A stretch of 64,000 bases of DNA from Hemiscyllium ocellatum (lineage: Eukaryota): contig NC_083408.1 in the NCBI RefSeq assembly GCF_020745735.1, forward strand, positions 64,138,484 to 64,202,483. Direction: 5' to 3'. Positions 11,701-30,405 of the stretch are shown here, piece by piece. The notes under the pieces are model-generated. The model did not search any database, was not told the DNA's origin, and was given only the letters and a program-made list of their open reading frames with translations. The position numbers were made by a program, and so were the translations under genes. Within the stretch, counting starts at the first letter, position 1. Each line of letters begins with the position of its first letter.

Positions 11701-14700
11701 CAAAAGTATTATATTTTTAAATCAACTTGTTCAGAAATAGCACTACACACATCTGGAACAAATGGGCTTGAACCCAGCCCTCCTGGCTGAAAGATGGGAC
11801 ACTAACACTGTGACATAACAGCTCTCACAGGTCAGTGGTCAAGTGAAGTCCCAGTTCATGCCGACTATCTGAATATAATTCAACACAATTTATAGATTAT
11901 CAATACACTATGGTTTTTAAAATTGATACAGATGTACACAAGATGGAGCTCTAACTTGTCTGAAATGTATGGCAATTTGTAAATTAACATAACTATTAAG
12001 TGAGTAAATCAATTTTACTCTTTATTGAAAATCATATACTTACAAAGGGAATACAGCTTCCTGTGTACAGTGCAATGTATTGATGTAATCTGGACTCGGA
12101 TTATAAAGCATTGTATACCAGTCTGACAGCATCTTCACTCGGCAGGATCGGATTTTCAGTTGCCCAATTGGATCATTCACCAATAATGTAACAATAGCTG
12201 CAACAGTACATTCCAATAATGCTGTCACATGCTGAAAAAGTGCACTGGAACTATAGGGAAAAAGAAAATCTGATTCATTAAGATGAACTTTGTATCTTTA
12301 AAATAATGACAACAGATTTTATTTCAAGGTATAACGAAATGCAAATAAAAGACAAAATAAGAGGCTGCTCTGATTAAGATTCAGAAAAATTCGAAGAAAC
12401 TTAAACTTATGAAGGAATGCAAATGAGCAATTAGAAATTAGCTATTTTCAGTGACTGAGGTGGTTCTAGATCTTGGAACAATAGATGTAGAGTGCAATAG
12501 CAGCAACCCAACATAAAACAAGAGAAGGATCAGAGGGAAAATGAGACAAGTGCCCGTACCACCAATCTGTTTACATACATCTCAAATTCTACTCTATCCT
12601 TCTTATAGTTCATAATATTTCCAACTTTTGAAATTGTGCCCTGTACACAAAGTTCTAGGTTATTTATATATGACAACTATTGCTGGAAAACATGATTAAA
12701 ATAGTTAGGTGATTGTTTTTGACAAGCACCTAAAATGAACCAAAGGGCCTTTTTCTGTTTTGTCAACCTCTATGAACAGCAAGGGTTCTAATACTGAATA
12801 GAGAATTCTACTGTAAATCTACTTTCATTCCAACAAATAACTACTGATAAACAAAAACAAACAGAAACTTAAAGAAACAAAAAGAAACGTAGCAGGTCAG
12901 GCAGCATCTGTGGACAGGAAAGAAAAGGAGTTAATGTTTTGAGTCCAGTGACCTGTCGTTAGAACTAAATGAACTAAAAACCAGGTGCAGAGGAATAATT
13001 GGAGTCTGTGCCCAGAGAGAGGGAGGGCTTGGAAAAGAAAGTTTCATTGGAACGGTGAAGCACGTCAGAGGCAGAAATGTTGACAAAGGAACAGGTGGTG
13101 GGCCCCCGATCTAAGGAAGATGTGCCATCATTGGAGGAAGTCCAGAGGTGGCTTAGATTAGATTACTTACCGTGTAGAAACAGGGCCTTCGGCCCAACAA
13201 GTCCACACTGACCCGCCGAAGTGCAACCCACCCAGACCCATTCCTCTTCATTTACCCCTTCACCTAACACTACAGGCAATTTAGCATGGCCAATTCACCT
13301 AACCTGCACATTTTTAGATTGTGGGAGGAAACCGGACCACCCAGAGGAATCCCACGCAGAGACAGGGAGAATGTGCAAACTCCACACAGAGGAACAGATG
13401 GGAATTGAACCCGGGTCTCTGGCGCTGTGAGGCAGCAGTGCTAACCACTGTGCCAACGTGCCGCCCATTTACAAAAATGACTATGGGCATGAAGGGCTTG
13501 TCATAGGAGGACAGGTTGAGTACTTTGGGTCTGTGCTCAATGGTGCTTAGGAGGAGGAGGAAGGATCTCATTGAAACTTACCAAAACACTGAGGCGTGGA
13601 TAGAGTGGATGTCGAGAATATGTTTCTACTTGAAAAGACGAGGACCCGAGAGCACAGTCTCAGAGTGAAGGGACCACCCTTTAGAATTGAGATGAGGAAG
13701 AATTTCTACAGCCAATGGGTGGTTACTTTGTGGAACTCCTCGCCACAAAAGGAAATAGTGGCAAGTAATTGAGTGCATTTAAGATCGAGATAGATAGGTT
13801 CTTGATTAATAGCGGAATCAAGGGTTACAGGGGAAAGACAGGAGAATTGCATTATTAGCCACGATTGAATGGCAGAGCAGACTCAATGGGCCTTAAGGGC
13901 ACTATGGATCAACGTACAGCACCTGGACTGCAGTGATTCAAAAAAAACAGCTCACCTCCACCTTCTCAAGGGCAACTAGGGACAGGCAATAAATGCTGGC
14001 CAGCCATCAAAATCCATATCCCATCAGTTTTCTTTTTAAAAGCTGCCAGTGATTGAGGAACTCAAATCACAGTATCCAATGTGATATATAAATCAACATT
14101 TGGACAGCAGTTGACGAATATGCTAAGATGACAACTAATTTAACATTGTTAGTCAGCTTGCAATGGGGTGCATTTGTGCATTTTGGAAAATGCATATCTT
14201 AATACACAGGACCTTGTTCTTTGTAGACAGAAAGAACAAGTACACATATGGCTGCTGCTGCAACAAAAACAAGTGAAAACCAATCTATGGTTCATTTCTC
14301 AGAGCAAGACCTAAACCAGAGTTAACCTGCATGACTTAAAATTTAAACAAAGCTTGGAAGTTAACTATGAGTCATCTTCTAACGTAATTCTGCACAGCAA
14401 TGCCTCTACTCATTAAAATCTACTTGTTAATTGATTAGCACCCTCAGAGCATAAAATGTTGTTTACCCTTTACATTGGTGTTTCTTACAAATTATCCTGG
14501 TATGTACAAGATGAAAGACTTCAAGAAAATGTTTCTCAACTATAAACAGAACTAAGATTATTCAGTTGCATTTCACATGGACTCCTTGCAGCAACCAAAG
14601 ATGACTTTCACATCCTCAGTCTCTACTAATTCATTTCCTACCAGGGTAAACTCAACATTTAACCTACTGTGACATCTTCACATGTAAAAGTCAATACCAA

Positions 14701-17700
14701 GTAACACCACCATTTACACTTATTGTTCTAAAATAACACTAACCTTTTCTTCCCTGAATACCATTCGATAAAGAACCAATGCAAAATCAGAGGCAGCATT
14801 GCCATGAAGCCTAAGTACAACCAATCGTAGAGTTCCGGTGAATCCTCACATTTTCGACAAATCCTCAGTTCATCTGTTCTTTCCCCTCTTGGGCATACCT
14901 ACAGAGCAGTTGTTTTAAGATAAATGAAAAAGAATCTTCTCATTACCAATTTACATTAAATGTTTGTGTGTCACGTTTTTCCAGAATAAACTCATGGAAA
15001 TATATTTGCAAAACCATTTCTATTAAAACTAGCTCCTAACTGTTAGAATTTGGAGTATTGCTGGGCTTCTTGCTGAGATATTTGTATCATTGATAGTCAC
15101 AGGTGAGGTACCGGAAGACTGGAGGTTGGCTAACATGGTGTCACTATTTCAGAAAGGTGGTAAGTAAAAACCAAAGAACTATAGACGAGTGAACCTGACA
15201 TCAGTGGTGGGCAAGTTGTTGGAGGGAATCCTAAGGTACAGGATTTACATATATTTGGAAAGGCATGACTGATTAGGAATAGTCAGCATGCCTTGTGTGT
15301 GAGAAATCATGTCTCGTGAACCTCATTGAAGTTTTTGAAGAAGTTACAAAGACGATTGATGAGGGGAGAGCAGCAGACATGATCAGTAAGGTTCTTCATG
15401 GGAAACTGGTTAGCAGGGTTAGAGCACATGGAATACAGGGAGAAATAGCCATTTGGATACAGAACTGGCTCAAAGGTAGAAGACAGAGGGTGGTGGTGGA
15501 GGGTTGCTTTTCAGACTGGAGGCCTGTGACCTGTAATGGGCCACAAGGATCAGTGCTGGGTCCACTGCTTTTCGTCATTTATATAAATAATTTGGATGTG
15601 AACATAGTGGGTATAGTTAGTAAGTTTGCAAGTGACACACAAATTGGAGGACAGAGTAGAATGGGATCTTGATCAGATGGGCCAATGGGCTGAGGAGTGG
15701 TAGGTGGAGTTTAATTTAGATAAATGCAAGGAAAAACATTTTGGAAAAACAAATCAGAGCAGGACTTATACTTTGGTAAGGTCCTGGGGAGTGTTGCTGA
15801 ACAAAGAGACCTTGGAGTGCAGGTTCATAGTTCTTTGAAAGTAGAGTTGCAGGTAGATAAGATAGTGAAGGCTGTGTTTGATATTAGATTAGATTAGATT
15901 AGATTAGATTCCCTACAGTGTGGATACAGGCCCTTCGGCTAACCAGTCCACACCGACCCTCTGAAGAGTAACCCACCCAGACCCATTTCCCTCTGACTAA
16001 CTGACCTAACACTATGGGGCAATTTAGCATGGCCAATTCACCTGATCTGCACATCTTTGGACTGAGAGAGGAAAGCAGAGCACCTGGAGGAAACCCACCG
16101 GACACAGGGAGAACATGCAAACTCCACAGACAGTCACCCGAGGCTGGAATCGAACCTGGTACCCTGGTGCTGTGAGGCAGCAGTGCTAACCATTGAGCCA
16201 CTGTGCCAGTCAGAGTATTGAGTACAGGAGTTGGGAGATCATGGTGCAGCTGTACAGGACACTGATAAGGCCACTGTTGGAATATTGAATGCAATTCTGA
16301 TCTCCTTCCTATCGGAAGGATGTTGTGAAACTTGAAAGGGTTCAAAAAAGATTTACAAGGATGTTACCAGGGTTGAAGAATTTAAGTTATAGGAAGAGGC
16401 TGAATAAGCTGGGACTGTTTTCTCTGGAGCACCGGAGGCTGAGGGATGAAATTACAGAGGTTTAGAAAATCATGAGGGGCATGGATAGGATAAATAGACA
16501 AGGTCTTTTTCCCTGGGGTGGCGGAGTCCAGAACTAGAGGGCATAGGTTTAGGGTGAGAGGCGTAAAGATATAAAAAAAGGACCTAAGGAGCAACTTTTT
16601 CACGCAGAGGGTAGTGCATGTATGGAATGAGCTGCCAGAGGAAGTGGTGGAGACTGGTACAATTACAACATTTGGATGGGTATATGAATAGGAAGGGCTT
16701 AGAGGAATATGGATTAGTGGTGCTGGAAGAGCACAGCAGTTCAGGCAGCTCCGAGGAGCAGTAAAATCGACGTTTCAGGCAAAAGCCCTTCATCAGGAAT
16801 AAAGGCAGAGAGCCTGAAGCGTGGAGAGATAAGTTAGAGGGGAGTGGTGGGTGGGGAGAAAGTAGCATAGAGTACAATAGGTGAGTGGGGGAGGGGATGA
16901 AGGTGATAGGTCAGGGGCTGGGGGAGGGTGGAGTGGATAGGTGGAAAAGGAGCTAGGCAGGTCGGACAAGTCATGGGGACAGTGCTGAGCTAGAAGTTTG
17001 GAACTAGGGTGAGATGGGGGAAAGGGAAATGGGGAAACTGTTGAAGTCCACATTGATGCCCTGGGGTTGAAGAGCTTCAGGGCAGAGGAAATGACCTGGG
17101 AGTTGCAGTAGGAGAGGGACTCCCTGAGATTCTTGTAGAGAGAGGAGGAAATATGGGCCAAGTGCTGGCAAATGGGTCTAGATTAGGTTAGGATATTTGG
17201 TCAGCATGGATGAGTTGGATGAAGAGTCTGTTTCCGTGCTGTACAACCCTGCGACTCTGAGTCATTAACCCCTTCAAAATCAATTTCTGAAATAATTTGA
17301 TGATCTATTTTCTTTAATTACAAGCAAGATTTCATGCATGGTGCTAACATCTAAGCAATCATATCAAAGTACAACAGAATTATTAGTACTCCTGAGCATG
17401 CCTCAAGTACTCTATTGCCAGTCAATGCAACACCACAATAATCTGTACTCAAGGAATCTTTCTTTGCATATCAAAAGGAATTGATTTAATGCGATCATTA
17501 CCTATTATGTGAACTGTCCAATTACAAAAGATATTATTTACCATTCAGCCCATTAGTCAGGTCAGGCCATCAAGATTTCTAATTACCTTTGTGAAACTCT
17601 CTAGTCAGCTTGGAAACATTTCAATAGCAGTTCCTGGCCAATACAAAGAAAGCTTTGGTACTCAGCTATTTTGACTTAGCCCTACCAATTACGTCATTCT

Positions 17701-20700
17701 TAGATTCTTCTAAAGTGCTTATCTTTTAGTTATTATGTCACGGTCTAGCTTTTTGAGAGTTTTGTCAATTTCAGAAGTTTGCTTCTTTACAATTTGGCTA
17801 ATAGAAGTCCAAAACACATTCAACGTCATACGAACCCGACAGCTGTTTTCACCCAGTGTATACTACATGAAGGTATAAAATAGTTCTGCACAAGATTACA
17901 TTCAAAGAAGTGTATTTAAGTTAGTTTTCATTGAAATGCAAGAAAACGAAGGATTTGCTAGATGATTTGAAGGAGAAAAACACAATTTGGGAAATAAGAT
18001 CAAGATGAGAGTGGCATGTCTAAAAACAACCTGTATTTCTTTATGAATTCAAACTATAAATCTATTTCAACTAAAATCACAGCACCTTAATGCTTGTAGT
18101 TTGAATCCAGAAGCAAATCAATGGCAGTTTATTCAGTGACTTGCATCAGGATGATCATTTTTCATTCAAATTATGGAGTCAACAAGTCTGCTTCGAACAT
18201 ATAAATACACTCCTTCAAGTACACAAGATTAAACAGTGAATAAATTAATAATTATTCAATCTTTTTATCTATAATTAAAACAAATGCCGCAGCACCATAT
18301 AATGAATTTAGTTTACAGATAGCAGTCATTAGCTCTATACTTTGATAAATCCAACTTGCAAATGCTAATTGCAAAATTAAGAAAACACTGCCTCCAGAGA
18401 GATAGTCAGCGGTCACACAACACCATGTTATATTCCACCAGGTTTATTTGAAATGACAAGCTTTTCGGAGCATGCTGCTTCATAGATTTCACCCGAAAAA
18501 GAGCAGTGCTCCGAAAACTTGCGATTTCAAATAAACCTATTGAACTATAATCTAGTATCATGTGACTTATATCCTCATCCACCCCAGTCCAACACTGGCA
18601 TTGCCACATCATTCTAGAGTCCTATGAGCAAATTTGTAAATAGAAGACCCAGACACATTTAGAATGAAATACAGACCTGACTGTATGATCAACACAAAGG
18701 AGCTACGATTACCTGGCATTGGATTATCCGAATATCAGACTGTCTGGCAAGTTTGCAAGGTCCCAACACTTGGCTAAACTTATCTGGCATTCAATTAACC
18801 AAACGAAATACTCCCTGCCCGTATCCTTTAGATAATCAAGCTTCCTCTGTATATGTTTCACATACTAAACATAATCACAAAAGTTGTTCAATATTAATGA
18901 ATATACAAATACTGGATTTTTTTAAATTGCTTGAATAACAGCTATCACCTAAGCCCTTGTGTAAACCTGTGATCTCTAAGGGCTAATTGCACCTTTAATC
19001 ATTGTCAGTTTTACTCTACACAAGAAATGAAAAACGTACAAAACCACTTACCCCACATTCTCCAAACTGTGGATGGCTGTCATTTCTGTTTTCTATTGTT
19101 GACCTCCCACAGTATAATCCAGGGCACATTAAATTAACATCTGAAATTAATAACATTCTTAACAAGTTTCCCAAGCATTAAACTAATTTTAATGCAATTA
19201 TAATGTAAATATTTGAATGATAATTACTATAAACCATTTAAAACTGACTAGATATCAAAGCATTGAAGAATATGACATAATTTAACCCTAACAAAACCAA
19301 ATGGAAAATAATTCCAATGGTGAATTCACATCAGGTACAATAAAAGGTAGTTGTGAGTCACAGAACTCTCATTACAGTCATGGTAATCTTGCCAAAAATT
19401 TGTAATGGAAGTGTTTGTGGCCCAAGCAACTACAATTACTTCATCAAAGATCAAGATTGGAGTTGTTTGCTGAGGTTTCCAGAATATTTAATTAAATTCT
19501 TGAAGCATCCCATGCCCGTCTGCTTTAGGACCTACTGAAAATTCAGGCTTGGACTTAGAAACAATAGCTAACATTTTGCAGGCAATAGCCATTTCAAAGT
19601 ACTCAAGCACCTTTCCTTGACTTTTATTGAGACTTCTAACATAGATCATCATTGATCAGAAGTTGAACAGGAGCAGCAATATTAATAATTGTTACCACTG
19701 ATCCACAGGCAAGGTTCCCAAATTCATTATGATTCCAGGTGAGACTGCCAATTCATTATAATCCTGAATGATTCAAACCCTATCCTCCACACTTCAGTTG
19801 GTCAAACCAAGGTTAACTTAACACAGGAATCCTTTAAACAAACAAACCAGAAATTACTAGGGAAGCTTAGCAAGTCTGGCAAAATCTATGGAGAGAAAAC
19901 AGTTAGCATTGAGTCCAGCAACCCTTCTATTCTTACTTGAAGTTGTTTGACAGCCCCCCGGTGTGACATTCCACGATCCGATTGGAATGGGTTATAATTT
20001 ACACAGGAATTTTAAAGTCACTGAATTTATATTCTGAGAATTTACATTCCCCATCATCTTTGCCTGATGCCTTTTCCTTTTACTCAAGATTTCAACATGT
20101 CTGGTTATGTTTGGTCTGGACAAGTCAAAATGAATAACTCACTCCAAAACCATTAAACTATCATCTCCATTTAGAAGAATGAAGTCAAGTGTGTGATTGA
20201 ATTCCAGCCACTTATTCAGATGGATACACCTGCAATAACTTGTATGTGTGTTGCACGTTTAATGGTAAAGTGCTACAAAGGAAGATGATCAAACAAGTTG
20301 TTAAATTGAGACATACGAGAAGTTTTACAGGCTCGTGACTGTAATTAGCAGTTCAAAGAAGGTTCAATATGCTGAATCCTCGGGTGAAGGGAGTGTCTTA
20401 AACGAAAAGGTTGAAGTTTAGAAGACAGAGTGATTTTACAGAAATTTGTAAGTTTGTTTTTGTGATTGTTAGTGTAGATACTGAGAGGATGTTTTATCTG
20501 TGGGAAATCTAAAACTTGGAGCACAGATTAAAAATCAGGGGTCTCCACTTTAAAACAAAAATGAGGATACATTTCTCTTCTCAGTTTTAGTCTTTGGAAT
20601 TATTTTAGAGACTCAAATACTGAATACATTCAAGGCTGAGTTGCAATGAAATTGTATCAAAGGGATTCAAGGGTTATGGGAGGTCGGCAAAAAAGTGGTG

Positions 20701-23307
20701 TTAAGGCCACAACGAGATAATTCATGATCTTACTTAATGGCACAGAAGGGGCCAAGTAGCCTATGCCTCCTGATTAATTTATCTAATGAGAATTTAAGAG
20801 AAGTGATCATAAAAGTAAGATTTAATTAGCATCTTAAAGTGAGGGAAAGCAGTGGAAAAGTTCATTTAAACAACATTTTATTCATTCAGAAACTGAGAGT
20901 TGCTAGATAGGCCAGAACGTTTTGCCCATTCCCAGTTACCCTTGAGAAAATTGTAGCAAGTTAACTTTGTGAACTACTGCAGTCTATTTGGTTTACGTAC
21001 ACACACAATGCTCTACCACACCAAAATGCCAATACTTGGATCCTAGGCAACAGAAGAAAATTAAGAATGGGATACAAGTCAGAACTGGAGTACACAGACT
21101 GCAGAGGATTGAAGGGGTGTAGAAGGTTACAGAGGTTTAGAGATTAAGAACAAGGAAGATTTGAAAATGGTTAAGATTTACAACAGACGCTGTAGGATCA
21201 GAAGCCAATGAGTAAGGAGTGCAGTAACTTGTGTACAGAACTCGGTAGTTAGGAAAAAAAGGCAAGTTTAACAAGAATGCAAGGTAGGAGACTAGCCATA
21301 AGATATGTACATTGTGAATGCAGAAGTTAAAAAGTGATGGATGAGAGTTTCAGTAGTAGTTGCAGTGATGCAGGGTCAAAGACAGGGTATGTGATGAAGA
21401 AAGACTAGTCAGTGAAGTATGCAGTGAGGATGTGAATGCTTAGCTCAGGGATAGCAAGGATGCCAGCTGTCTGGTTCAACTTCAAAATCCAAGGTGTCAA
21501 AAACTGTGCACATTATGAGACCTTTAGGTAATAACTACTCCCTTTCCAACATTTGAATGGAGGCAATTCTGCCTATTCAATTCTGAATATCACGTAAGTA
21601 TTACCAATCATAGAGAGGTTAAGATCAATTTGTGAAAGCTTCAAGATCATCCTAGGATAAAGTAATTAGACTGATTAACATTTCTGATACTTGGCCTAAT
21701 ATAATCCCTTTCATCACCAACTATTGCGTGTATGCCTAAAATGTACATAACTCAATGCATCCACCCAAACTCACTGTGAAACTTCCCACTTTGCAAACTC
21801 TGTTTCAGGAGGACAAGAGTCATTGTTCAAATATACCAAGCCAGATTGATAGAGGTGGTAAAAGTGAAACACAAACTTTATTAACTAAAACAATTTAAAT
21901 AAATGCATACGTGAGAATAGCAGACAGTGATGTATTGATGGGTATTACAAAATAGTAATGTTCTGTTACGTTGTCTTTACAAAGGAGAATTATTCAATAA
22001 CCATTATCAATATAGGTTAATTAGATTTAATGTGACTGCTATTGCAGTTCTATTTCAAGTCTAAAGCCTTTTTCAATGAGCTACATTTAATGTTGACGAC
22101 TTTTGAGTAATCACCGAAATACTGCCAGTTCTTACTGCCAATATTACAATAGAAGGCATCATAAATCATTTCGTAGACTCGATGGACCTAATGGCCTTAC
22201 TTCCACTCCTTTGTCTTATGGTCTTATTTACTCACGTATTAACTGATCATTTATTTCCTGAATCAGTTAATATGTTTTACAACAATTTGAATTCATATAA
22301 CAGCCTTAATAAATTAAATCACTTTGCTTCCAATCAGAACATTCACAAAGTTCTATTCCCGCCTCAGGTGACTGACTGTGTGGAGTTTGCATGTTCTCCC
22401 CAATGTTTGCGTGGGTTTCCTCCCACACTCCAAAAATGTGCAGGTCAGGTGAATTGGCTATGTTAGATTGCCCGTAGTGTCAGGTAAATGTAGGGGAATG
22501 GATCTGGATGGGTTGCACTTTGGCGGGCCGAAGGGCCTGTTTCCACACTAAGTAATCTAATCTAATTATTTGTAAGCAATGTTTGGGAGAAATTCATATA
22601 AATGCAATTATCTTCAGTTCACAACTATCATAAAATCACTAGTATCTAAATAAAAGCAAAAATAACAGGAAAATAGAATGTGTATTTTTTTTAAATTCAT
22701 TATTCCACTAAGGGCTTTTCAACAAGGCTAACAGAAAGTTGCATGCAATCATACAAGCAAAAGTTATGACCAGGTTCCAACAGAGTTTTGAAAACTGAGT
22801 CATGAGGAGATATGCAGTGACTTTTTGTGGCTCCCAATGGCTCAGAAATAGTTCAATTTTAAGACCAACACGGTACAGAATTACTTTGGCGTGTTTAAAG
22901 ATTTAAAGAAAGCAACTTATTGATGTATCTTTATCTAAATACATGGTAAAGATGCATTAAAGGCCTTGTATGACCAGTAGCCAGTGGGTAACATTAATAT
23001 TTTTATAAGCTCTGAATGATTAGGCAGTTGTTAGTCACACCCTTGAGTAAAAGAAAATGTGTTGAGGGTGGGGGGATAGTTTGGTTTACATTGGGCAATA
23101 GAGACAGCCTAGTATTTTCTGATACATTGCTGAAAAGGTGCAAGAGCAATATTGTGGATGACTTAAACGCCTTACCACCACCCACCCAACACACACACAC
23201 ACACACACACACAGATAGAAACACAATAGTGAGGACGACTAGGTCCCTTACCCCACCCCCCAACACACTCACACACAATATTGAGGAGGACGAGATCCCT
23301 TACCCAT
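2790..23307 (-). CDS. JKAMP: JNK1/MAPK8-associated membrane protein (JAMP), complete, 310 aa
   Basis: Coding exons in transcript order: 23304-23307 (ATGG), 19052-19140, 14744-14898, 12044-12250, 7845-8026, 3666-3742, 2790-3008. All junctions are GT-AG and phase-compatible (933 nt). The protein MDVNLMCPGLYCGR...GECGVCPRGE...LYDWLYLGFMAMLPL...LSDWYTMLYNPSPDY...KKIACGLGKSDRFKSIYAALYFFPILTVLQAVGGGLLYYAFPY...EPSRILSEGGNGH* matches vertebrate JKAMP. Confidence 0.97.
3284..3550 (-). mobile_element. CR1 LINE 3' end fragment
   Basis: Closely similar to the 3' end of the CR1 at 59943-60200 (ATAGAGATGTACAGCATGGAAACAGACCCTTC...). Confidence 0.8.
4325..5240 (+). mobile_element. Penelope-like element remnant (GIY-YIG endonuclease fragment and terminal repeat)
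   Basis: Translates GCTEAQYICKIKQRLRQRMNGHRTTINRQE, a degenerate YIGxTxxxLxxRxxxH GIY-YIG motif. The terminal segment AAAATCACACAACACCAGGTTATAGTCC recurs at ~18415 and ~54896 and contains a hammerhead-like core. Confidence 0.65.
4375..4408 (-). ncRNA. Minimal hammerhead ribozyme motif, second family
   Basis: Minus strand reads CAC-CUGAUGA-A-GGAGC-AGC-GCUCU-GAAA-GC-UA, with palindromic AGCU stem III. Confidence 0.45.
5834..7227 (+). mobile_element. 5'-truncated CR1 LINE (RT C-terminus and 3' UTR), interrupted by an insertion at ~6278-6743
   Basis: KFADDTKIGG, WKMEFN, RDLGMQVH and YRSWEV peptides; CR1 sequence resumes after ~6743. Confidence 0.9.
6278..6743. mobile_element. Palindromic Penelope-derived element nested in a CR1
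   Basis: Inverted arms of ~150 bp (6285-6440 vs 6550-6697), each with a decayed CTGATGA-stem-GAAACGTC hammerhead core. Confidence 0.6.
9185..11010 (-). mobile_element. Young 5'-truncated CR1 LINE with a nearly intact RT domain
   Basis: ORFs 10478-10924 and 9258-10649 (one frameshift between them) encode [39 protein letters not shown] and FADDTK. The 3' tail is (TTCTATG)n at 9185-9204. Confidence 0.95.
13153..13466 (-). mobile_element. HE1-type tRNA-derived SINE inserted in a decayed CR1 fragment (~13100-13900, +)
   Basis: tRNA-like head (GGCACAGTGGTTAGCACTGCTGCCTCACAGCGCCAGAGACCCGGGTTCAATTCC), CR1-like 3' end and (AATCT)n tail. Confidence 0.85.
15883..16207 (-). mobile_element. HE1-type SINE nested in a CR1
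   Basis: Same head and body as 13153-13466, with a long (AGATT)n tail. Confidence 0.85.
16712..17150 (-). mobile_element. Penelope-like element 3' fragment nested in a CR1
   Basis: Matches 57785-57952. Contains a pyrimidine-rich tract and a hammerhead core, and is flanked by an imperfect duplication (GAGGAATATGG / GAGGAAATATGG). Confidence 0.65.
16765..16800 (-). ncRNA. Minimal type-I hammerhead ribozyme motif (Penelope-associated)
   Basis: Minus strand reads AUUC-CUGAUGA-A-GGGC-UUUU-GCCU-GAAA-CG-UC-GAUU: conserved core boxes, stem II hairpin, palindromic ACGU stem III and a GUC cleavage triplet. Confidence 0.55.
18693..18851. mobile_element. Second, more diverged copy of the same MITE family
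   Basis: Shares internal sequence (CAAGGTCCCAA...CTTGGCTAAAC...GCATTC..TTAA..GAAATAC) and the right TIR GATAATCAAGCTTCCTCTGTA with 2050-2191. Confidence 0.6.
22358..22565 (+). mobile_element. 5'-truncated HE1-type SINE
   Basis: GTGGAGTTTGCATGTTCTCCCC...GAAGGGCCTGTTTCCACAC...AATCTAATCTAAT. Confidence 0.75.
23188..23213 (+). repeat. (CA)n microsatellite
   Basis: About 12 CA units in JKAMP intron 1. Confidence 0.9.
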
Positions 23308-23429
23308 GTTTATTTCCAGCAGCAGCCACTTCCATCCCAATGTGACGACACTTCCGCCTCCGTGTCCCGTACACTTCCGGTTGGGGTGGGTCTAACTGTG
23401 GACCCGCCCCCTGTCCTCCCCAGGTTGGG
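23308..23429. promoter_or_regulatory. Bidirectional promoter shared by JKAMP and L3HYPDH, at the edge of a CpG island (~23340-23960)
   Basis: Divergent ATGs at 23307 (-) and 23430 (+). ETS/GABP-type cores ACTTCCG (23350-23356) and ACTTCCGG (23373-23380), GC box CCCGCCCC (23403-23410). CpG-rich DNA continues through L3HYPDH exon 1 in an otherwise AT-rich, CpG-poor window. Confidence 0.75.
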
Positions 23430-26400
23430 ATGGATGCAGTGGGACAGCGGCTGGGGCCGGGCTCCGTGCTCTCGGTGCTGGATATGCACACGGGCGGTGA
23501 GCCGCTCCGGATCATCACCGGCGGCTTCCCCCCGCTGCCGGCGGGCGACATCCTCAGCAAGCGGCGCTATGTGCGGGAGCGGCTGGACGGCCTGCGGCGG
23601 AGGCTGATGTTCGAGCCCCGCGGCCACAGGGACATGTACGGCGCGCTGCTGGTGGGCTCCGAGCGGCCGGACGCTCACCTCGGCGTCCTCTTCATGCACA
23701 ACCAGGGCTACAGCACCATGTGCGGGCACGCCGTGCTGGCCCTCGGCCGCTTCGCCCTGGACTACGGCCTGATCAAAGAGCCCAGCTCCCCCGAAACCCA
23801 GGTCAACATCGACTGCCCTTGCGGCCTGGTCCGGGCTTTCGTGCGATACGACAAGGGCAAGAGCGGGAGGGTCCGCTTCCACAGCGTCCCCGCATTCGTA
23901 TTCGCTACAGGTAAGAGAGAGAGGGGCTCAGGAGCCGGGGCTGGAGGTTCAGCACCACCGCCTGTGACTACACAGGCAGCAGGGTTTGCATTGTCCGACA
24001 TTAAAGTGAATTGATTCACCTTTTAGACAAAACGCACCAGTGAACTGGCAATAAAAAGACCACACACTGGGCTGATCCGGCAGTAACTGCTGGAGAAAGG
24101 ACAGGTTTTAATCTTTCAGGTCAATGACCGTCAGAACAGAACACCTTAGACACGGTCACTCCCTCCACAGGTGCAAAGTACTATCTTTCAACATTTTGAC
24201 AAGTTCATCCCAGTTGGCGCTTTTAGCTGCAGGTGCCTGGAAATATATTCAACACATCGTAACATTAAGTGTTTAGATGAGCACTTGCCATTAGACATTG
24301 CCACGAGCGAAGAAAAAGGGGATTAGAATAGTTTGGTGCTGTGTTTTGACCAACACAAGAGATCTCTAAGCCATTAGCCATACTTCTTGCATTTACGGAT
24401 GGCACAATTCAGAGCTATTGTACCTACACATACAAACAACATACAGTACTAGTTTACTCTCCTCTCTTTCAGATGTTACTGTTGATGTACAAGGATTTGG
24501 GAAGATTGCAGTGGATATTGCATATGGAGGTGCTTTTTATGCATTTGTGAGCGCAGATCGTTTTGGTTTAGATGTTTGTTCCTCCAAGACCCAGGATCTT
24601 GTAAATGCAGCAGTATCTGTCACTAATACTGTGAAAACACATGTATGTAAAGGAGCCAAATATTGTTTTGACTAATCAGTATTGCACCTTTTTGTACTCT
24701 GACTGTAAATGCTTTCTGTGCCCTTGTTTTCTGCAGTGGCTAAGAAACTCTGCAAATTTAAGTTGTAAACGCCCCAAATGGAAGTGCAGATCCCTGCTAT
24801 GTCAACTAGTTGTGTGGAACAAATTAAACCATAACATTCTGCACTCCTGACAATAACTGTACTGAAATTAGACCTTACAAACCTAACTGAGCGCCAAAAC
24901 TTTTGATATTAATGAACATAGTCATAAAGATGTACAGCACAGAAACAGACCCTTCAGTCCAACCTGTCCTTGCCAACCAGATATACAAAATTAATCCAGT
25001 CCCATTTTCCAGCACTTGGCTCATATCCCTTCCTATTCATGTACTCATCCAGGTACAATTACAACATTTAAAAGGTATCAGCTCCACCACTTCCTCCAGT
25101 AGCTCAATCCATACACTCAACACCCTTTGCATGAAAAAGTTGCCGCTAGGTCCCTTTAAAATCTTTACACTGTCAGCCTAAACTTATGCCCTCTAGTTCT
25201 GGACTCCCCTACCCCAGGGAAATGACCTTGTCTATTTACCCTATCCATGCCTCTCATGATTTTCTAAATTTCTATAAGGTCACCCCTCAGCCTCTGACGC
25301 TCCAGGGAAAACAACCCCAACCTATTCAGCCTCTCCCTATAGCTCAAATCTTTCAACAATGATGACCTCTTGGTAAATCTTTTCTGAACCCTTCCAAGTT
25401 TCACAACATCCTTTTGATAGAAGAGAGACCAGAATTGCACACAATTTTTCAAAAATGGCCTAATGCCCTGTACATGACCTCCCAACTCCTATACTCGATG
25501 CTCTGACCAATAAAGGAAAGCCAGGCCAAATACCTTCTTCACTGTCCTATCTACCCGAGACTCCACTTTCAAGGGACTGTGAACCTGCACTCCATGCGCT
25601 CTCTGTTTAGCAACACTCCCCAGGACCTTACCATTTAATGTATAGGCTCTGCTCTGATTTGCTTTTCCAAAACACCACCTCACATTTATTTAAATTAAAC
25701 TCTGTCTGCCACATCTTGGGACATTGGCCCATTTGATTAAAATCCTATTGTATTCTGATACAACAGAGAATTGAGAACTTTGCTGAGAACTACACCTCCA
25801 ATTTTAGTGTCATCTGCAAACTTACTAACTATACCTCTTATGTTCACATCCAAATCATTTTATATAATGATGAAAAGCAGTGGATCCAGCACCGATCCTT
25901 GTGGCACACCACACCAGACAGGCCTCCAGTCTGAAAAGCAACCCTCCACCACAACCCTGTCTTTTCCTTCAAGCCAGTTGTGTATCCATATGGCTAGTTC
26001 TCCCTGTTATCCATGTGATCTAACCTTGTTTGAAACCTGCTGTTTATATTCAGCCTTCCCAGATCAGAAAGTTGATGGAAGCTCAACAAGAAGATCTGAC
26101 AGTTGCAGATCCATCACGTGGTTTGGAATTGGCATAACTTCCCAATCTGGCAACCTTGCAAACCTGGGATAATAACCTCAGATTTTGAATCTAGGATTTG
26201 TTAAAATGTTTCCTGAATATCCCTTAAAGCCTTAAAGACAGTATTTACGTATTTTGAAGTGAGTTACGCTATTTGCATCAGGATTAATTTTTTTAGTCTC
26301 CTAATTACTAAAAGTTGAAGCTATAATAGATATAAAAATAAAGTTGATATTATTAACTCAAGGTCAGTATCAGTTCAGAATAGTTTTTCCCAAACTATGC

Positions 26401-29400
26401 TTCTCTGCACTGATCTCCATTTCAGCCTAGTCAGTTGACTATTCTGTGTTCCATTGCATTATTGGTCAGGAGTTTGCATGCAAATTAATTTGCTATTATC
26501 TGACAAACCTGTGCTATCTCTAAAGGTATAGTTCTCTATGATGCCCCTGCATCAGTATTGATGTCTTTCATGTTAATGAAGGAAACCATCTGGAAGTTAA
26601 TTATGACAAGCCTTCACTCTTCCAATTTGGCGTCCAAGTTAACTCTATGACCAATGTACTCTTTCATTTATAATCACATACATTTTGTGGCTAATAAGTG
26701 TGAACTAGTACTGGTTGCCATTACAAGCTGTTGTTCAAACATTACTTCTGTTTCCTACCAAAAATAGATTAATTTCCAGTTAGGTTTAGAATGTTGCTGT
26801 GAGCATCTCTAGAACTCTGGAAGTGCTGTATTAAATCACAAGTTAGAACATACTTGGTGGTTTTGAGATTCAAACAAAACAAAATTCCAAACAAAACCCT
26901 ATAAACTGAAGATGGAGTCTATTGCTGATATGTACTAATTTCAAAATTCAGCAGTTTTATACAAGTTCATTCCATTTCACAACTGACTGGAACACATGTC
27001 CGTCAATAGCATGTAGTAGTCCACCAAATGAAACACTCCTTATACACTAAGCAATACTATTAACAGATTATATCTTTGGCAGGTCAGGTCTGGAGGGAAA
27101 AATCTCTCCACCTTTCGAGAGCTGTATTCTTACTCAGTCTCCAGGGTGTGTGGAGGAGAATTCAAAATTAGGAAATAAGTTACCTAGCATATGATTTTCT
27201 TTATTATTTAAAATATTACAGAGGGCATGTATTTGAATTTGATTACTTCTGATCTAGTAAGCTAACATGTGTAAAAGAGTTTTATACTGTGGGCATTACC
27301 CACCAAATGGTTTGGTCAGAATTTACTCTTGTCCTCTGTGAAGAATATCCAATTTTCTACTGTCACATTGAGTGTTTAACTATTCTCATACCAAATAGTA
27401 GTTTGATTAACGGTTGTCTGTTCAAATTGAGATTCTGAGAAGTAATTATGTTTGAAAATGCTTAACTATTAAAATAGACTTTCAGCTGGTATCTACCAAA
27501 AAAACAAGTATTACAATTGAGCCAAAGGGTTAATATCAAATCTTGCTTTATTTTTGTAACAGGTTAAGTTCCATCACCCTGACAGTGAAGACCTTGCTTT
27601 TCTCTATGGGACTATATTAACTGATGGAAAAGATGCATTTTCTGAAGAGCCAACAGCAAATATCTGTGTTTTTGCAGATGCTCAGGTAGGTAAAATAACT
27701 GAGTAAAACTTATTAAAATAAACATTATGATCTCTAGTCATTTCATTTAACCCAATTGCAAAATTTGAAGTGGAATAAAATCTTTGAATTTCAGTTTTGA
27801 AATTCTCAAACTTGTTTCTTTTTAGGAATATCAATTTACAATTCAAGTTCATTAATCAAATTGAACATGACATTCTTCGTGCAATAAAGGGAAAAGAAAG
27901 TATCTGTCCAAACTTCTTCAAAATATTTTCATTTTTATGTATAAATGGAATTGATAAGCTCAGTTGAAATTTGATAATTTTGAAAATGTCAGATTTTACC
28001 ACATTAAGAACAGCTCCAAGAGAATCCATTATAGGGAACATTTTCACGTGCACTGGAGCAACTCTTGAAAACACAAAGAGCTATGAATAAAATAGAGCTG
28101 CCTACTAATTAGACAATAATTGGAACTTCCACCTCCATCTTTGCAATGTTTTCTATCAACATTGAATACTTTTTAGATTTACAAACTCGAAATAACCTGT
28201 TCATCGTTTCAGCTGAGAAATATCAACCGGTTTAATGGCTGAAATCAAATAAAAAGTTGCGTAGTTCTACTGGACTCTGGCTGCACTCTCATTAGAATGA
28301 TGGTTTAACCCAAGGGTCACCAAACCTCAGGTAAGGGGAGAGATTGAGAAGAAGAATTCTTCATGGTCACCTCAGCCAGTACAGGAATTGAACACATGCT
28401 GTTGGCATCACTGTTTTAAACCAGCTGTCCAATCAGCTGAGCTAACCAATTCCCATTCAAATACAATTCATGCATAAAGAACAGTTCAAACATTTTTTGT
28501 GTAACTTATAGGTTGACAGAAGTCCTTGTGGCTCAGGTGTGACTGCTCGTATTGCACTGCAGTACCACAAAGGATTGATTCCCCTGAATCAAATGAGGAC
28601 ATTTCAGAGTGGTCCAACGAGTTCACTGTTCACAGCAAAAGCTGTAGAGGTAATTGACATATTATCAATATTGTTACTTTTTGAAACCCAATTAGTTATT
28701 TTGGCCCAAGCCATAATGCTTAGCTGCATTTATCTTTTCTGTCAATATCAAGAGCCAATAATCTATACCTACTATGTATGGAAATTACAGAAATATGGTA
28801 TTCACCACAAGTTGTAGAAATTAACTTCGGCTTCAGAAATTAATGTTTATTGGAAATTCCATTTTTAATTGCTCGAGTTTTTCTTGCAATTAATCCTTCT
28901 GATTTTTGAAGTTATTTTAAATATTCCTTAAAGTTTATAGTACCAAATATCAACAGTAAAGTAAGTATACAAATATTACAGAATGATCCAGCTTAAGTAG
29001 CAAACAGAATGCAGTTTCCATCAATGTGGCACCCAAAGATAGTATTGTTCCATTTCCACTGTACAGTGTGCAAACAGGTTAAAAGCTTTCCATTTCATGA
29101 CCAAGAATTGTTATCAGTATTAAGTTATGTAATATTAGTCTAGAGAGAATTCAACCGTCTGTTTTTTTTTAAATTAACTTACAAATTTAATCAGCATTCA
29201 GTCACCATTATACTTAGCTCCACTTTAAAACATGGGTCTGTCTACTCCTCCACTTAAAGATGAGTATCTGTCTAAGTTAATAACTACTATATAGCCCAGA
29301 AATGCATCTGGATTAAAAAAAACAAAATTATCTTTCCGTATCAATTTGTTGTGGATGGTGTGCTTCACTAATGTTCTATCTGCATCATTAAAATAACAGA

Positions 29401-30405
29401 GAAAAGACTTAGAACAAGTTAGAAAGTTCATTTCCTGAAGCTTTTTGTCTTACACTTACCAGAACTAGGTTACAATAAACAGATTGGAATTAAGAGACAC
29501 GTTTTATATGGCACGAGAGAGGCTGGAGATTGTGCCATAATTGACATGGAGATGCAGAAACCAGTTTAACTGTCAATCTTAATTCTCAGACTCGCAGATG
29601 GATTCTTATTGATCAGGGAACTGAATTGGGGGTGCAGCAGAATTTGACTGTTTCCATATCCCCTTTCATTGAAATTGGTTTAATGTATCTACACTCCTTT
29701 TTGATTTTGCCCCTCTCTCCCTTCCCTCACTTTTAGTTTATTGCACAGACCTTGATGGACTTTCCACATTAACATGGTAATTTAACTGGAAAATACAGAT
29801 ATTTAGTAGTGGTGAATAAAGGTGAAAAGTAACACAGGTGATGGGGGAAATAAAAAAAAGTATTGAGAGAAAGCATTTCTGAATAAAAATAGAAGTCCTG
29901 AGGAAAGGGGTTTGGAGATGGATGGTAGAACAATGGGTCAGGGGTTGTTTTCTCTCTTAGTCCACCTCCCGTGAATATATTTTCAAAATCTAAAGATTTA
30001 TAACCAGCATATTCAGATCAGAAACAGAAAGCTACCACTATTTCTTTTTTAAAAATTTTGAATAAATATGGACAAGTAACTATTAAGAAATATTTAAAAA
30101 CTGGTCAAAACCAAAGATTTTTTCATAGTTTCTGCATGATATTAAAAGCTTTGTATATAGCACAGACTTAAGCAACATTTGTCCAGTTATATTTATTTGG
30201 TAGCTTCTGTATATTATGTGCCAACCGTGTGCAATATCATAAAAAAGACTGATAAAAATAGTCTTTTTTCCCTCTACAGGAAACTAAATGTGGTGATTTC
30301 AGAGCTGTTATAGTGGAAGTAGCAGGACAAGCATATTATGCAGGAACAGCAAATTTTTACGTGGAAGATGATGACGATCTGAAAGATGGGTTTCTGCTCC
30401 GCTAA
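23430..30405 (+). CDS. L3HYPDH: L3HYPDH/C14orf149 orthologue (proline racemase superfamily), 345 aa, with a Cys/Cys active site
   Basis: Exons 23430-23910, 24473-24642, 27563-27685, 28512-28649 and 30280-30405 (1038 nt, GT-AG, in frame). Motifs: DMHTGGEPLRI, EPRGHRDMYGA, YSTMCGH, DIAYGGAFY, FLYGTI, QVDRSPCGSGVTAR, DGFLLR*. Lies between JKAMP and GPR135. Confidence 0.96.
24917..26028 (-). mobile_element. CR1 LINE 3' fragment in L3HYPDH intron 2
   Basis: Peptides CVQFWS, RVQKRFT and LRGDLIE, plus a CR1 3' UTR. Confidence 0.9.
28270..28450 (-). mobile_element. Old tRNA-derived SINE in L3HYPDH intron 3
   Basis: Minus strand begins GGTTAGCTCAGCTGATTGG...GTGTTCAATTCC (A- and B-box-like). A related decayed copy lies near 44150-44230. 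Confidence 0.5.

What the first reader, a model, noticed from the sequence alone, without database searches (positions are those of the whole stretch)
28512..28649. L3HYPDH has a Cys/Cys catalytic pair (DRSPCGSG): a predicted vertebrate hydroxyproline epimerase/proline racemase
Seen: exon 4 begins GTT GAC AGA AGT CCT TGT GGC TCA GGT = VDRSPCGSG, giving Cys264 (TGT at 28527-28529). The first catalytic residue is also Cys (MCGH; TGC at 23721-23723, Cys98). The ORF and all splice sites are intact. Established: in the proline racemase superfamily, Cys/Cys dyads catalyse racemisation or 2-epimerisation. Human L3HYPDH has Cys104/Thr273 (DRSPTGSG) and is a trans-3-hydroxy-L-proline dehydratase, and its engineered Thr-to-Cys mutant gains 3-hydroxyproline epimerase activity. 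Thr (ACN) to Cys (TGY) needs at least two base changes, so a single-base sequencing error is unlikely. Inference: this lineage naturally carries the specificity-switched enzyme at the orthologous locus. It may interconvert trans-3-hydroxy-L-proline and cis-3-hydroxy-D-proline, or racemise proline. That would imply an undescribed D-imino-acid or collagen-breakdown route in cartilaginous fish. Caveats: some bacterial Cys/Cys enzymes are bifunctional dehydratase/epimerases, and the motif here is SPCGS rather than the SPCGT of classical proline racemases.
Basis: partly seen in the sequence, partly recalled or inferred. Interest (0 to 1): 0.88.

Follow-up and report, generated by a model that had tools for sequence, protein, structure and literature searches.

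The report
Cartilaginous-fish L3HYPDH carries Cys/Cys pair
Sharks, rays and chimaeras have replaced one catalytic threonine with cysteine in the enzyme that other vertebrates use to break down collagen-derived 3-hydroxyproline; the same change turns the human enzyme into an epimerase, so these fishes may process this amino acid differently, although some bacterial enzymes with the same cysteine pair still act as dehydratases.

Summary
The window holds an intact 5-exon, 345-aa L3HYPDH gene with Cys98 (TGC, MCGH) and Cys264 (TGT, DRSPCGSG).

It lies at the orthologous locus. The order JKAMP(-)/L3HYPDH(+)/GPR135-like(+) is the same in chimaera, skate and the Thr-type gar, and the exon sizes are identical.

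The Cys is not private to this species.
- All 11 chondrichthyan entries found (9 species of sharks, rays and a chimaera) carry DRSPCGSGVT.
- About 90 bony-vertebrate orthologues and most invertebrate orthologues carry DRSPTGSGVT.
- Ancestral-state inference gives Thr at the vertebrate root (P about 0.99) and Cys at the chondrichthyan root (0.98).
- Codons differ synonymously (TGT/TGC), and dN/dS to chimaera is 0.24.
- The same switch recurs in a sea cucumber, an acorn worm paralogue and one teleost transcript.

All other known pocket residues are of the 3-hydroxyproline-dehydratase type, not the proline-racemase type. The protein is therefore a natural copy of the human T273C epimerase mutant.

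However, a 95-97% identical orthologue of the characterised Bacillus cereus-group T3LHyp dehydratases is also Cys/Cys, so the pair alone does not prove loss of dehydration.

The most likely activity is T3LHyp 2-epimerase or bifunctional epimerase/dehydratase. This is not proven. No cyclostome sequence was obtained.

The parts
23430..23910 (+). L3HYPDH exon 1 (start codon 23430-23432; first catalytic Cys98, TGC 23721-23723, in NQGYSTMCGH)
   Evidence: Pfam PF05544 E=2.5e-49; tblastn with P0001 94% identity
24473..24642 (+). L3HYPDH exon 2 (170 nt; contains AYGGAFYAF with Tyr183)
   Evidence: same 170-nt exon in gar and chimaera
27563..27685 (+). L3HYPDH exon 3 (123 nt)
28512..28649 (+). L3HYPDH exon 4 (138 nt; the finding). 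DRSPCGSGVT with second catalytic residue Cys264, TGT 28527-28529
   Evidence: PF05544 E=4.1e-9; 100% identical to P0001 over this exon
30280..30405 (+). L3HYPDH exon 5 with stop codon TAA 30403-30405
23250..24000 (.). CpG island over the shared JKAMP/L3HYPDH 5' region and exon 1 (GC 0.67, CpG o/e 0.81-0.88; window mean 0.39 and 0.27)
   Evidence: This is indirect support for an active promoter, not proof of expression.
2793..19177 (-). Neighbour gene JKAMP, head-to-head with L3HYPDH. Coding exons lie at about 19019-19177, 14731-14898, 12043-12297, 7807-8073, 3636-3896 and 2793-3032.
   Evidence: Open stretches; Pfam PF05571 JAMP, E=1.6e-30 to 9e-4, covering profile positions 21-292 in order
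44530..45834 (+). Neighbour gene: single-exon GPR135-like GPCR downstream of L3HYPDH
   Evidence: 7tm_1 E=1.9e-48; nearest Atlas clusters are named G-protein coupled receptor 135, score 0.98

Best explanation
[quoted passage not shown] In it the second active-site residue, Thr in all bony vertebrates, is Cys.

Shown here:
- The replacement arose from Thr in the stem lineage of cartilaginous fishes.
- It has been kept in sharks, rays and chimaeras.
- The rest of the substrate pocket is unchanged.

Inferred mechanism:
- Cys98 removes the C-alpha proton of trans-3-hydroxy-L-proline, as in the dehydratase.
- In Thr-type enzymes the carbanion can only expel the 3-hydroxyl, giving pyrroline-2-carboxylate.
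- With Cys264 on the opposite face, the intermediate can also be re-protonated, giving cis-3-hydroxy-D-proline.

The enzyme is therefore most likely a 3-hydroxyproline 2-epimerase, or a bifunctional epimerase/dehydratase. The partition ratio between the two reactions is unknown.

Orthology:
- The order JAMP(-)/Pro_racemase(+)/7tm_1(+) is shared with Callorhinchus, Rhinoraja, C. plagiosum and the Thr-type gar.
- Exon sizes 481/170/123/138/123 are identical to gar.
- There is one copy, and no second exon 4, in the window or in the three loci with DNA.

Distribution:
- 11/11 chondrichthyan entries carry Cys. About 90 osteichthyan entries and 13 invertebrate Thr-type orthologues carry Thr.

Tree and polarity:
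- Vertebrates have support 99/100 and chondrichthyans 100/100.
- Mk2 reconstruction gives P(Thr)=0.99-1.0 at the vertebrate root and P(Cys)=0.98 at the chondrichthyan root.

Constraint:
- Cys is encoded by TGT and by TGC.
- dN/dS to the chimaera is 0.24.

Pocket:
- D68, Y70, M97, Y183, Y232, R261 and S266 equal human D74, Y76, M103, Y192, Y241, R270 and S275.
- The AF2 model has pLDDT 95.4 and TM 0.88-0.95 to 7QPO and 6R76.

Literature:
- The human Thr-to-Cys mutant shows T3LHyp epimerase activity (PMC3958920).
- PaLhpL, with Cys at the second position, converts T3LHyp mainly to cis-3-hydroxy-D-proline, with weak dehydration (PMC5144071 supplement).
- The Cys/Cys enzyme TlProR epimerises 3-Hyp (PMC4364671).
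- Swiss-Prot lists a 3-hydroxyproline 2-epimerase (A9AKG8) among the Burkholderia dehydratases.
Against: - No enzymology exists for any chondrichthyan protein.
- A Bacillus protein (L054) has Cys/Cys (MCGH, DRSPCGTG). It is 95-97% identical to the characterised t3HypDs Q6HMS9, Q73CS0 and Q81HB1, and an OCD/mu-crystallin gene lies 23 bp downstream of it.
- Across 76 bacterial loci of this clade, OCD-family genes flank Cys/Cys genes as often as Cys/Thr genes (15/49 against 9/27). A Cys/Cys pair is therefore compatible with a dehydratase pathway.
- Long conservation of Cys may reflect only that every single-base change from TGY is harmful. Reversion to ACN needs two steps.
- Epimerisation is reversible and dehydration is not, so a bifunctional enzyme would still act as a net dehydratase in vivo.
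- The Visser 2012 paper could not be read here, so the residual dehydratase activity of human T273C is unknown to me.
Confidence: 0.55

Rival explanations
1. [quoted passage not shown] Cys264 is a tolerated substitute for Thr and was probably reached through a Ser intermediate. It is kept because all single-base neighbours of TGY are worse, not because a new activity is selected.
For: - An orthologue (L054) 95-97% identical to the characterised Bacillus cereus-group t3HypDs is Cys/Cys. A Pyr2C-reductase-family gene is adjacent to it, and the published BC_0905 primer site lies directly before its RSPCGTG codons (PMC4113996).
- Acidobacterial Cys/Cys genes are paired divergently with OCD genes in 11/34 loci.
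- The shark protein keeps every Thr-type partner residue, for example Val268, which is Thr in the old Cys-type lineages.
- The best NCBIfam model is the dehydratase NF045511, as it is for gar.
- Only one gene copy is seen, so loss of the dehydratase would remove the known 3-Hyp route.
Against: - The closest experimental analogue is the human enzyme (about 70% identical, same DRSPxGSGVT context). It shows epimerase activity on exactly this substitution (PMC3958920).
- The Bacillus enzymes are only 36-37% identical to the shark protein. They differ at second-shell positions (HHGMYG against HRDMYG, and Thr268), which could be what keeps them dehydratases.
Confidence: 0.35
2. The enzyme has become a proline racemase or a 4-hydroxyproline epimerase, so both the substrate and the chemistry have changed.
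For: The Cys/Cys pair is the hallmark of these enzymes (PMC4364671). The fold is shared (TM about 0.9 to T. cruzi ProR).
Against: - Ligand site 1 is Tyr70 (DMYG), as in T3LHyp dehydratases. The three proline racemase structures aligned (7PB3, 1W61, 6J7C) have Phe there, and Phe at this site is described as ProR-specific.
- NQGYSTMCGH, AFYAF and GSGVT match the dehydratase subfamily, not GGYLNMCGH or PCGTGT.
- Only 8 positions are fixed differently between chondrichthyans and bony vertebrates. Apart from Cys264, none is a known pocket residue.
Confidence: 0.05
3. The Cys is an artefact, or the gene is decaying: an assembly error, a pseudogene or a misassigned paralogue.
For: None found.
Against: - The same residue is present in 10 chondrichthyan species, with two synonymous codons.
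- The ORF is intact and the splice sites are canonical.
- dN/dS is 0.24.
- There is a CpG island at the 5' end.
- Synteny and exon structure are conserved.
Confidence: 0.01

Closest known systems
[quoted passage not shown]
   Same: It is the orthologue. P0001 matches 7QPO at E=5.7e-166 with about 70% identity. The fold is the same, and so are the first catalytic Cys and the pocket residues (M103, Y192, S275, D74, R270, Y76, Y241 in human numbering). The gene neighbours JKAMP and GPR135 match my recollection of the human 14q23 arrangement, and here they are confirmed in gar.
   Different: The second catalytic residue is Thr273 in human and Cys264 here. Human Glu98 is Gln92 in all chondrichthyans, but two Thr-type fishes also have Gln.
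Engineered human T273C mutant (Visser et al. 2012, as cited in PMC3958920)
   Same: It has the same catalytic pair in the same DRSPCGSGVT context. It is reported to show T3LHyp epimerase activity.
   Different: It is an artificial single mutant. The chondrichthyan enzyme has had more than 400 My with Cys, plus about 27% other differences. I could not read the original kinetics.
Bacillus cereus-group t3HypD (Q81HB1, Q73CS0, Q6HMS9; Zhao et al. 2014, 'navy cluster 5')
   Same: A Cys/Cys pair is inferred from the 95-97% identical L054 and from L051. The HNEG-STMCGH motif is the same.
   Different: It is only 36-37% identical to the shark protein. It has PCGTGTS (Thr268) and HHGMYG. It is experimentally a dehydratase with an adjacent Pyr2C reductase gene.
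Burkholderia multivorans A9AKG8, 3-hydroxyproline 2-epimerase (Swiss-Prot name)
   Same: It is 42% identical and lies among the T3LHyp dehydratases in the fold/sequence ranking. It shows that 3-Hyp epimerases exist inside this subfamily.
   Different: It is bacterial. Its catalytic pair could not be checked here because no sequence was available.
Pseudomonas aeruginosa PaLhpL (PA1255), Ser/Cys type
   Same: It has Cys at the second position. It converts T3LHyp to cis-3-hydroxy-D-proline, with weak dehydration.
   Different: Its first residue is Ser, it belongs to a distant subfamily, and it lies in a bacterial gene-cluster context.
Classical Cys/Cys racemases and epimerases (T. cruzi ProR 1W61, TlProR 6J7C, PA1268 HypE 2AZP)
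   Same: The Cys/Cys dyad and the fold are shared (TM 0.83-0.91).
   Different: They are 24-35% identical. Their ligand-site residues differ (Phe against Tyr70), and their motifs are GGYLNMCGH and PCGTGT.

Membership tests
Proline racemase superfamily (Pfam PF05544) | Profile match over the whole domain | tested here: met
   Exon 1 E=2.5e-49, exon 4 E=4.1e-9; near-identical P0001 E=4.2e-109 over profile positions 1-324 of 325
Proline racemase superfamily (Pfam PF05544) | Two-domain fold with the active site between the domains | tested here: met
   AF2 model of P0001 has pLDDT 95.4. Foldseek gives TM 0.88-0.95 to 7QPO, 6R76 and 1W61.
Proline racemase superfamily (Pfam PF05544) | First catalytic Cys in the MCGH motif | tested here: met
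   Cys98, TGC 23721-23723. This column is invariant in alignment A1.
L3HYPDH orthologue group (vertebrate T3LHyp dehydratase, type I) | Orthologous locus and gene structure | tested here: met
   JKAMP/L3HYPDH/GPR135-like order in the window, chimaera, skate, C. plagiosum and gar. Exon sizes are identical to gar. The protein sits inside the vertebrate clade, support 99/100.
L3HYPDH orthologue group (vertebrate T3LHyp dehydratase, type I) | Cys/Thr catalytic pair (DRSPTGSG) | tested here: not met
   DRSPCGSG: Cys264 replaces Thr
L3HYPDH orthologue group (vertebrate T3LHyp dehydratase, type I) | T3LHyp pocket and closure residues (human M103, Y192, S275, D74, R270, Y76, Y241) | tested here: met
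   M97, Y183, S266, D68, R261, Y70 and Y232 are conserved
L3HYPDH orthologue group (vertebrate T3LHyp dehydratase, type I) | NCBIfam equivalog NF045511 above its cut-off | tested here: inconclusive
   It is the best model at 354 bits, but below the prokaryote-tuned cut-off of 540. The Thr-type gar protein behaves the same (374 bits).
L3HYPDH orthologue group (vertebrate T3LHyp dehydratase, type I) | Dehydration of trans-3-hydroxy-L-proline to pyrroline-2-carboxylate | not testable with these tools
   Needs an enzyme assay
Cys/Cys racemases and epimerases (ProR EC 5.1.1.4, HypE EC 5.1.1.8, 3-Hyp 2-epimerase) | Two catalytic Cys on opposite faces | tested here: met
   Cys98 and Cys264 align with the two Cys of 1W61, 7PB3 and 6J7C
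Cys/Cys racemases and epimerases (ProR EC 5.1.1.4, HypE EC 5.1.1.8, 3-Hyp 2-epimerase) | ProR-specific Phe at ligand site 1 (DMFG) | tested here: not met
   Tyr70 (DMYG), as in the T3LHyp dehydratases
Cys/Cys racemases and epimerases (ProR EC 5.1.1.4, HypE EC 5.1.1.8, 3-Hyp 2-epimerase) | PCG(T/S)GT motif (Thr four residues after the Cys), seen in long-established Cys-type lineages | tested here: not met
   Val268, as in all Thr-type enzymes. Thr is found there in bacterial, mollusc and hemichordate Cys-type lineages.
Cys/Cys racemases and epimerases (ProR EC 5.1.1.4, HypE EC 5.1.1.8, 3-Hyp 2-epimerase) | 1,1-proton transfer (epimer formation, solvent deuterium incorporation) | not testable with these tools
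   Needs an enzyme assay

The most novel reading that the evidence does not exclude
Cartilaginous fishes have no dedicated 3-hydroxyproline dehydratase. Their only L3HYPDH would be a PLP-independent 3-hydroxyproline 2-epimerase that makes cis-3-hydroxy-D-proline. This would be the first such imino-acid epimerase in a vertebrate, and it would feed a D-amino-acid-oxidase-type route for collagen breakdown. The independent Thr-to-Cys switches in a sea cucumber, an acorn worm paralogue and a teleost would then be repeated toggles between dehydratase and epimerase chemistry in animals.
Probability: 0.3. Interest if true: 0.75.

Novelty: new variant of a known kind. Interest (0 to 1): 0.55.

Why it matters
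L3HYPDH is the only known vertebrate enzyme acting on trans-3-hydroxy-L-proline from collagen.

- A whole vertebrate class carries the residue change that, in the laboratory, converts the human enzyme into an epimerase. This gives a natural experiment, more than 400 million years old, on how one residue partitions a carbanion intermediate between elimination and re-protonation.
- If the enzyme is an epimerase, cartilaginous fishes would make a D-imino acid and would need a different 3-Hyp disposal route. Current database names ('trans-L-3-hydroxyproline dehydratase') for all chondrichthyan entries would then be wrong.
- If the enzyme is still a dehydratase, then together with the Bacillus Cys/Cys dehydratases it shows that the widely used Cys/Cys-versus-Cys/Thr rule for annotating this superfamily is unreliable.

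Either outcome can be tested with one recombinant protein and one point mutant.

Tried and rejected
1. Cyclostome outgroups. None of the three homologue searches listed a lamprey or hagfish protein, because each list stops at 120 hits and is dominated by teleosts. Polarity rests on invertebrate deuterostomes and other animals.
2. The original Visser 2012 paper is not held. Its result is cited second-hand.
3. The catalytic pair of A9AKG8 (3-hydroxyproline 2-epimerase) could not be checked. The eLife tables and supplements are not held, and the genome scan returned no Burkholderia.
4. E92Q as a coupled second change was rejected as specific. It is fixed in chondrichthyans and sits at the human residue 98 contact with Gln267. 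However, Gln also occurs in the Thr-type Conger and Amia, and the other Cys lineages keep Glu. The association across representatives is weak and is confounded by phylogeny.
5. Hidden paralogy, a tandem duplicate or an alternative Thr-encoding exon 4 was rejected (and synteny).
6. Names for the 50%-identity representatives were mostly absent.
7. A literature search combining shark terms with proline racemase was uninformative.
8. The scan's earlier notes held nothing relevant.
9. Position 185 (aromatic against aliphatic) covaries with the pair in bacteria, but not in eukaryotes.
Full report
OBSERVATION

- Exon 4 (28512-28649) follows a ...tatag acceptor and is followed by a gtaatt donor. It translates to VDRSPCGSGVTARIALQYHKGLIPLNQMRTFQSGPTSSLFTAKAVE, with TGT at 28527-28529.
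- TGC at 23721-23723 is the Cys of NQGYSTMCGH.
- The five exons are 23430-23910, 24473-24642, 27563-27685, 28512-28649 and 30280-30405. All have GT/AG borders. They join into one 345-codon reading frame ending in TAA; alternative donor choices break the frame.
- tblastn with the best database homologue finds exactly these five pieces. It finds no second copy and no second exon 4 in the 64 kb.
- The 5' end lies in a CpG island: GC 0.67 and CpG o/e 0.81-0.88, against 0.39 and 0.27 for the window.

WHAT THE GENE IS

- Exons 1 and 4 match Pfam Pro_racemase.
- The nearest protein is the annotated 'trans-L-3-hydroxyproline dehydratase' of Chiloscyllium plagiosum, P0001. It is 96.5% identical over 345 aa, and none of the 12 differences is at a key residue. 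The window therefore comes from a closely related carpet shark.
- P0001 matches the crystal structure of human L3HYPDH (7QPO) at E=5.7e-166. It matches the Thermococcus litoralis T3LHyp dehydratase (6R76/6R77) at 6e-98.
- An AlphaFold model has pLDDT 95.4. It superposes on these structures with TM 0.88-0.95.
- The best Swiss-Prot matches are the vertebrate T3HPD entries, at about 70% identity.

ORTHOLOGY

- Upstream on the minus strand lie six JKAMP coding exons, which cover the Pfam JAMP profile in order.
- Downstream on the plus strand is a single-exon 7TM receptor whose nearest Atlas clusters are named GPR135.
- The same order, JAMP(-)/Pro_racemase(+)/7tm_1(+), is annotated around the gene in Callorhinchus milii (L003), Rhinoraja longicauda (L005) and the Thr-type gar Lepisosteus oculatus (L004). 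In gar a formin gene follows. In C. plagiosum, JAMP and Pro_racemase are in the same arrangement.
- I rebuilt the chimaera and gar coding sequences exactly. Exons 2-5 are 170/123/138/123 nt in all three species. Exon 1 is 481 nt in the shark and the gar.
- Each locus holds one copy.
- The Cys-type gene is therefore the same gene as the Thr-type gene of bony vertebrates, not a hidden paralogue.

DISTRIBUTION AND POLARITY

- All 11 chondrichthyan entries recovered have both MCGH and DRSPCGSGVT. They come from nine species: Chiloscyllium, Carcharodon, Mustelus, Heptranchias, Narcine, Pristis, Hemitrygon, Rhinoraja and Callorhinchus.
- About 90 full-length bony-vertebrate orthologues have DRSPTGSGVT. 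They include coelacanth, lungfish, bichir, gar, bowfin, amphibians, a mammal and many teleosts.
- The same Thr motif is found in five echinoderms, three hemichordates, a nemertean, a priapulid, a brachiopod, a gastropod and a sponge.
- In a maximum-likelihood tree of 57 proteins, vertebrates are one clade (99/100) and chondrichthyans one clade (100/100). The Thr/Cys character needs at least seven changes.
- A two-state Markov reconstruction gives P(Thr)=0.99-1.0 at the vertebrate root. This holds even when chondrichthyans are forced to be sister to all bony vertebrates. It gives P(Cys)=0.98 at the chondrichthyan root.
- Thr is therefore ancestral. Cys was fixed before chimaeras and elasmobranchs split, more than 400 My ago by common dating (background knowledge).
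- The Cys codon is TGT in this shark and the skate and TGC in the chimaera. The gar Thr codon is ACA.
- dN/dS between shark and chimaera is 0.24. The gene is constrained, and the residue is not an assembly error.
- No cyclostome sequence was obtained.

THE SWITCH IS RECURRENT

Cys is also present in proteins that otherwise carry the DRSP-GSGVT context of the Thr-type enzymes:
- Holothuria leucospilota (P0384);
- a second Saccoglossus gene (P0334) on the same contig as the Thr-type P0325;
- the fungus Paraglomus;
- one teleost transcript (P0101, Logan assembly of SRR19345908), nearest to Xenentodon and cichlids, with codon TGT.

Older Cys-type lineages carry DRSPCGSGT-. These include the bivalves Mya, Ylistrum and Solemya, and the hemichordate proteins P0140 and P0330. 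Among the 150 best 50%-identity representatives, 57 are Cys/Cys and 63 Cys/Thr. Many Cys/Cys ones keep the dehydratase-like HNEGYSTMCGH motif. A Cys/Cys member of this subfamily is therefore not unprecedented. A whole vertebrate class whose only L3HYPDH is Cys/Cys appears not to have been described; full-text searches found nothing.

ACTIVE SITE

- Only eight positions are fixed in chondrichthyans and rare in bony vertebrates: 17, 30, 40, 54, 92, 119, 208 and 264.
- The residues that the human structure paper names for binding and closure are all conserved. In human numbering these are Met103, Tyr192, Ser275, Asp74-Arg270 and Tyr76-Tyr241.
- Gln92 replaces the human residue 98 that contacts Gln267 in the open form. 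Gln also occurs in two Thr-type fishes, so I do not treat it as coupled.
- Ligand site 1 is Tyr70 (DMYG), as in dehydratases. The proline racemases 7PB3, 1W61 and 6J7C have Phe there. Watanabe et al. describe Phe at this site as specific to proline racemases.
- Val268 is the Thr-type partner residue. Long-established Cys-type enzymes have Thr there.
- The shark enzyme is therefore a dehydratase scaffold with one catalytic swap, the natural equivalent of human T273C. A change of substrate to proline or 4-hydroxyproline is unlikely.

MECHANISM AND ITS RIVAL

Established in the literature:
- In t3HypD the single Cys abstracts the alpha proton and the 3-hydroxyl leaves (PMC4113996).
- The human Thr-to-Cys mutant shows T3LHyp epimerase activity (PMC3958920).
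- PaLhpL, with Cys at the second position, gives mainly cis-3-hydroxy-D-proline plus weak dehydration.
- TlProR epimerises 3-Hyp.

Inference: Cys264 can re-protonate the intermediate from the opposite face, so the shark enzyme should form cis-3-hydroxy-D-proline.

I tested the generality of 'Cys/Cys means epimerase' on 80 bacterial and archaeal loci of this clade.
- 49 loci are Cys/Cys and 27 Cys/Thr.
- Genes of the OCD/mu-crystallin family, the Pyr2C reductase partner of the dehydratase pathway, flank 15/49 Cys/Cys genes and 9/27 Cys/Thr genes. In Acidobacteria the OCD gene is a conserved divergent neighbour in 11/34 loci.
- Some Bacillales Cys/Cys loci also carry DAO and Pyr_redox_2 genes.
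- The Cys/Cys protein of Bacillus locus L054 has an OCD gene 23 bp downstream. [quoted passage not shown] These accessions were characterised by Zhao et al., who report t3HypD activity for their Bacilli cluster.
- The published BC_0905 qPCR primer matches L054 with one mismatch, directly before the RSPCGTG codons.
- Characterised dehydratases are therefore very probably Cys/Cys.
- They differ from the shark enzyme at second-shell positions (HHGMYG, Thr268) and are only 36-37% identical to it. Even so, they show that the pair alone does not decide the reaction.

Two further cautions apply. Epimerisation is reversible and dehydration is not, so a bifunctional enzyme would still drain 3-Hyp to Pyr2C. 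Conservation of Cys may reflect only that all single-base neighbours of TGY are deleterious.

VERDICT

- The orthology claim is supported.
- The functional claim is plausible but open. My estimates are 0.55 for substantial epimerase activity (pure or bifunctional), 0.35 for an essentially unchanged dehydratase role, and 0.05 for proline or 4-Hyp specificity.
- This is a new variant of a known enzyme kind. It is of moderate interest and can be resolved with one recombinant protein and one point mutant.

Noticed in passing
L002:90-1124 (protein P0101; Logan assembly of SRR19345908): A teleost L3HYPDH transcript, 91-92% identical to the cichlid and needlefish orthologues, also has DRSPCGSGVT with codon TGT, while every other teleost seen has Thr. 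It may be an independent recent switch, or a variant in one sample. The species is unknown.
   Followed up: partly
proteins P0384 (Holothuria leucospilota), and P0334 and P0325 (Saccoglossus kowalevskii, same contig): A sea cucumber orthologue carries Cys in a Thr-type context. The acorn worm has a Thr-type gene and a very similar Cys-type gene on the same contig, plus a divergent Cys-type gene (P0140).
   Followed up: partly
L054:5977-6978 and L051:5977-6978 (Bacillus sp.): Orthologues 95-97% identical to the Swiss-Prot B. cereus-group 'trans-3-hydroxy-L-proline dehydratases' have a Cys/Cys pair. This does not fit the textbook Cys/Thr rule for dehydratases. An OCD-family gene lies downstream in both: 23 bp after the gene in L054, about 1.3 kb after it in L051.
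   Followed up: yes
L006-L042 (Acidobacteriota / Vicinamibacterales MAGs): Cys/Cys members of the dehydratase-like clade are paired divergently (27-296 bp in nine loci, about 1 kb in two) with an OCD/mu-crystallin gene in 11 of 34 loci. A gamma-glutamyltranspeptidase gene is often nearby. The function is uncharacterised.
   Followed up: partly
L001:484-1527 (protein P0121, bacterial MAG GCA_964504425.1): An intronless bacterial gene next to a bacterial-type glycerol-3-phosphate dehydrogenase encodes a Thr-type protein 59% identical to the shark enzyme. It is closer to animal L3HYPDH than the fungal protein sampled. This may be old gene transfer, or just very slow evolution.
   Followed up: no
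protein P0342 (Solemya velum, 560 aa): The gene model contains two MCGH motifs but only one DRSPCGSGTT motif. It is probably a fusion of tandem proline-racemase-like genes, or a mis-joined model.
   Followed up: no
protein P0053 (Sinocyclocheilus anshuiensis, 336 aa): This cavefish copy has DRSPAGSGVT (Ala at the second catalytic position) and lacks the GYSTMCGH motif. It may be a decaying duplicate in a tetraploid.
   Followed up: no
window 9261-10966 (-), 37450-39505 (-), 60213-61471 (-): Three LINE-like retrotransposon remnants. They have reverse-transcriptase ORFs (RVT_1; up to 465 aa open) and one endonuclease domain (Exo_endo_phos_2). They lie in JKAMP introns and in intergenic DNA.
   Followed up: partly
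window 23190-23215: A short (CA)n microsatellite lies just upstream of the CpG island shared by JKAMP and L3HYPDH.
   Followed up: no
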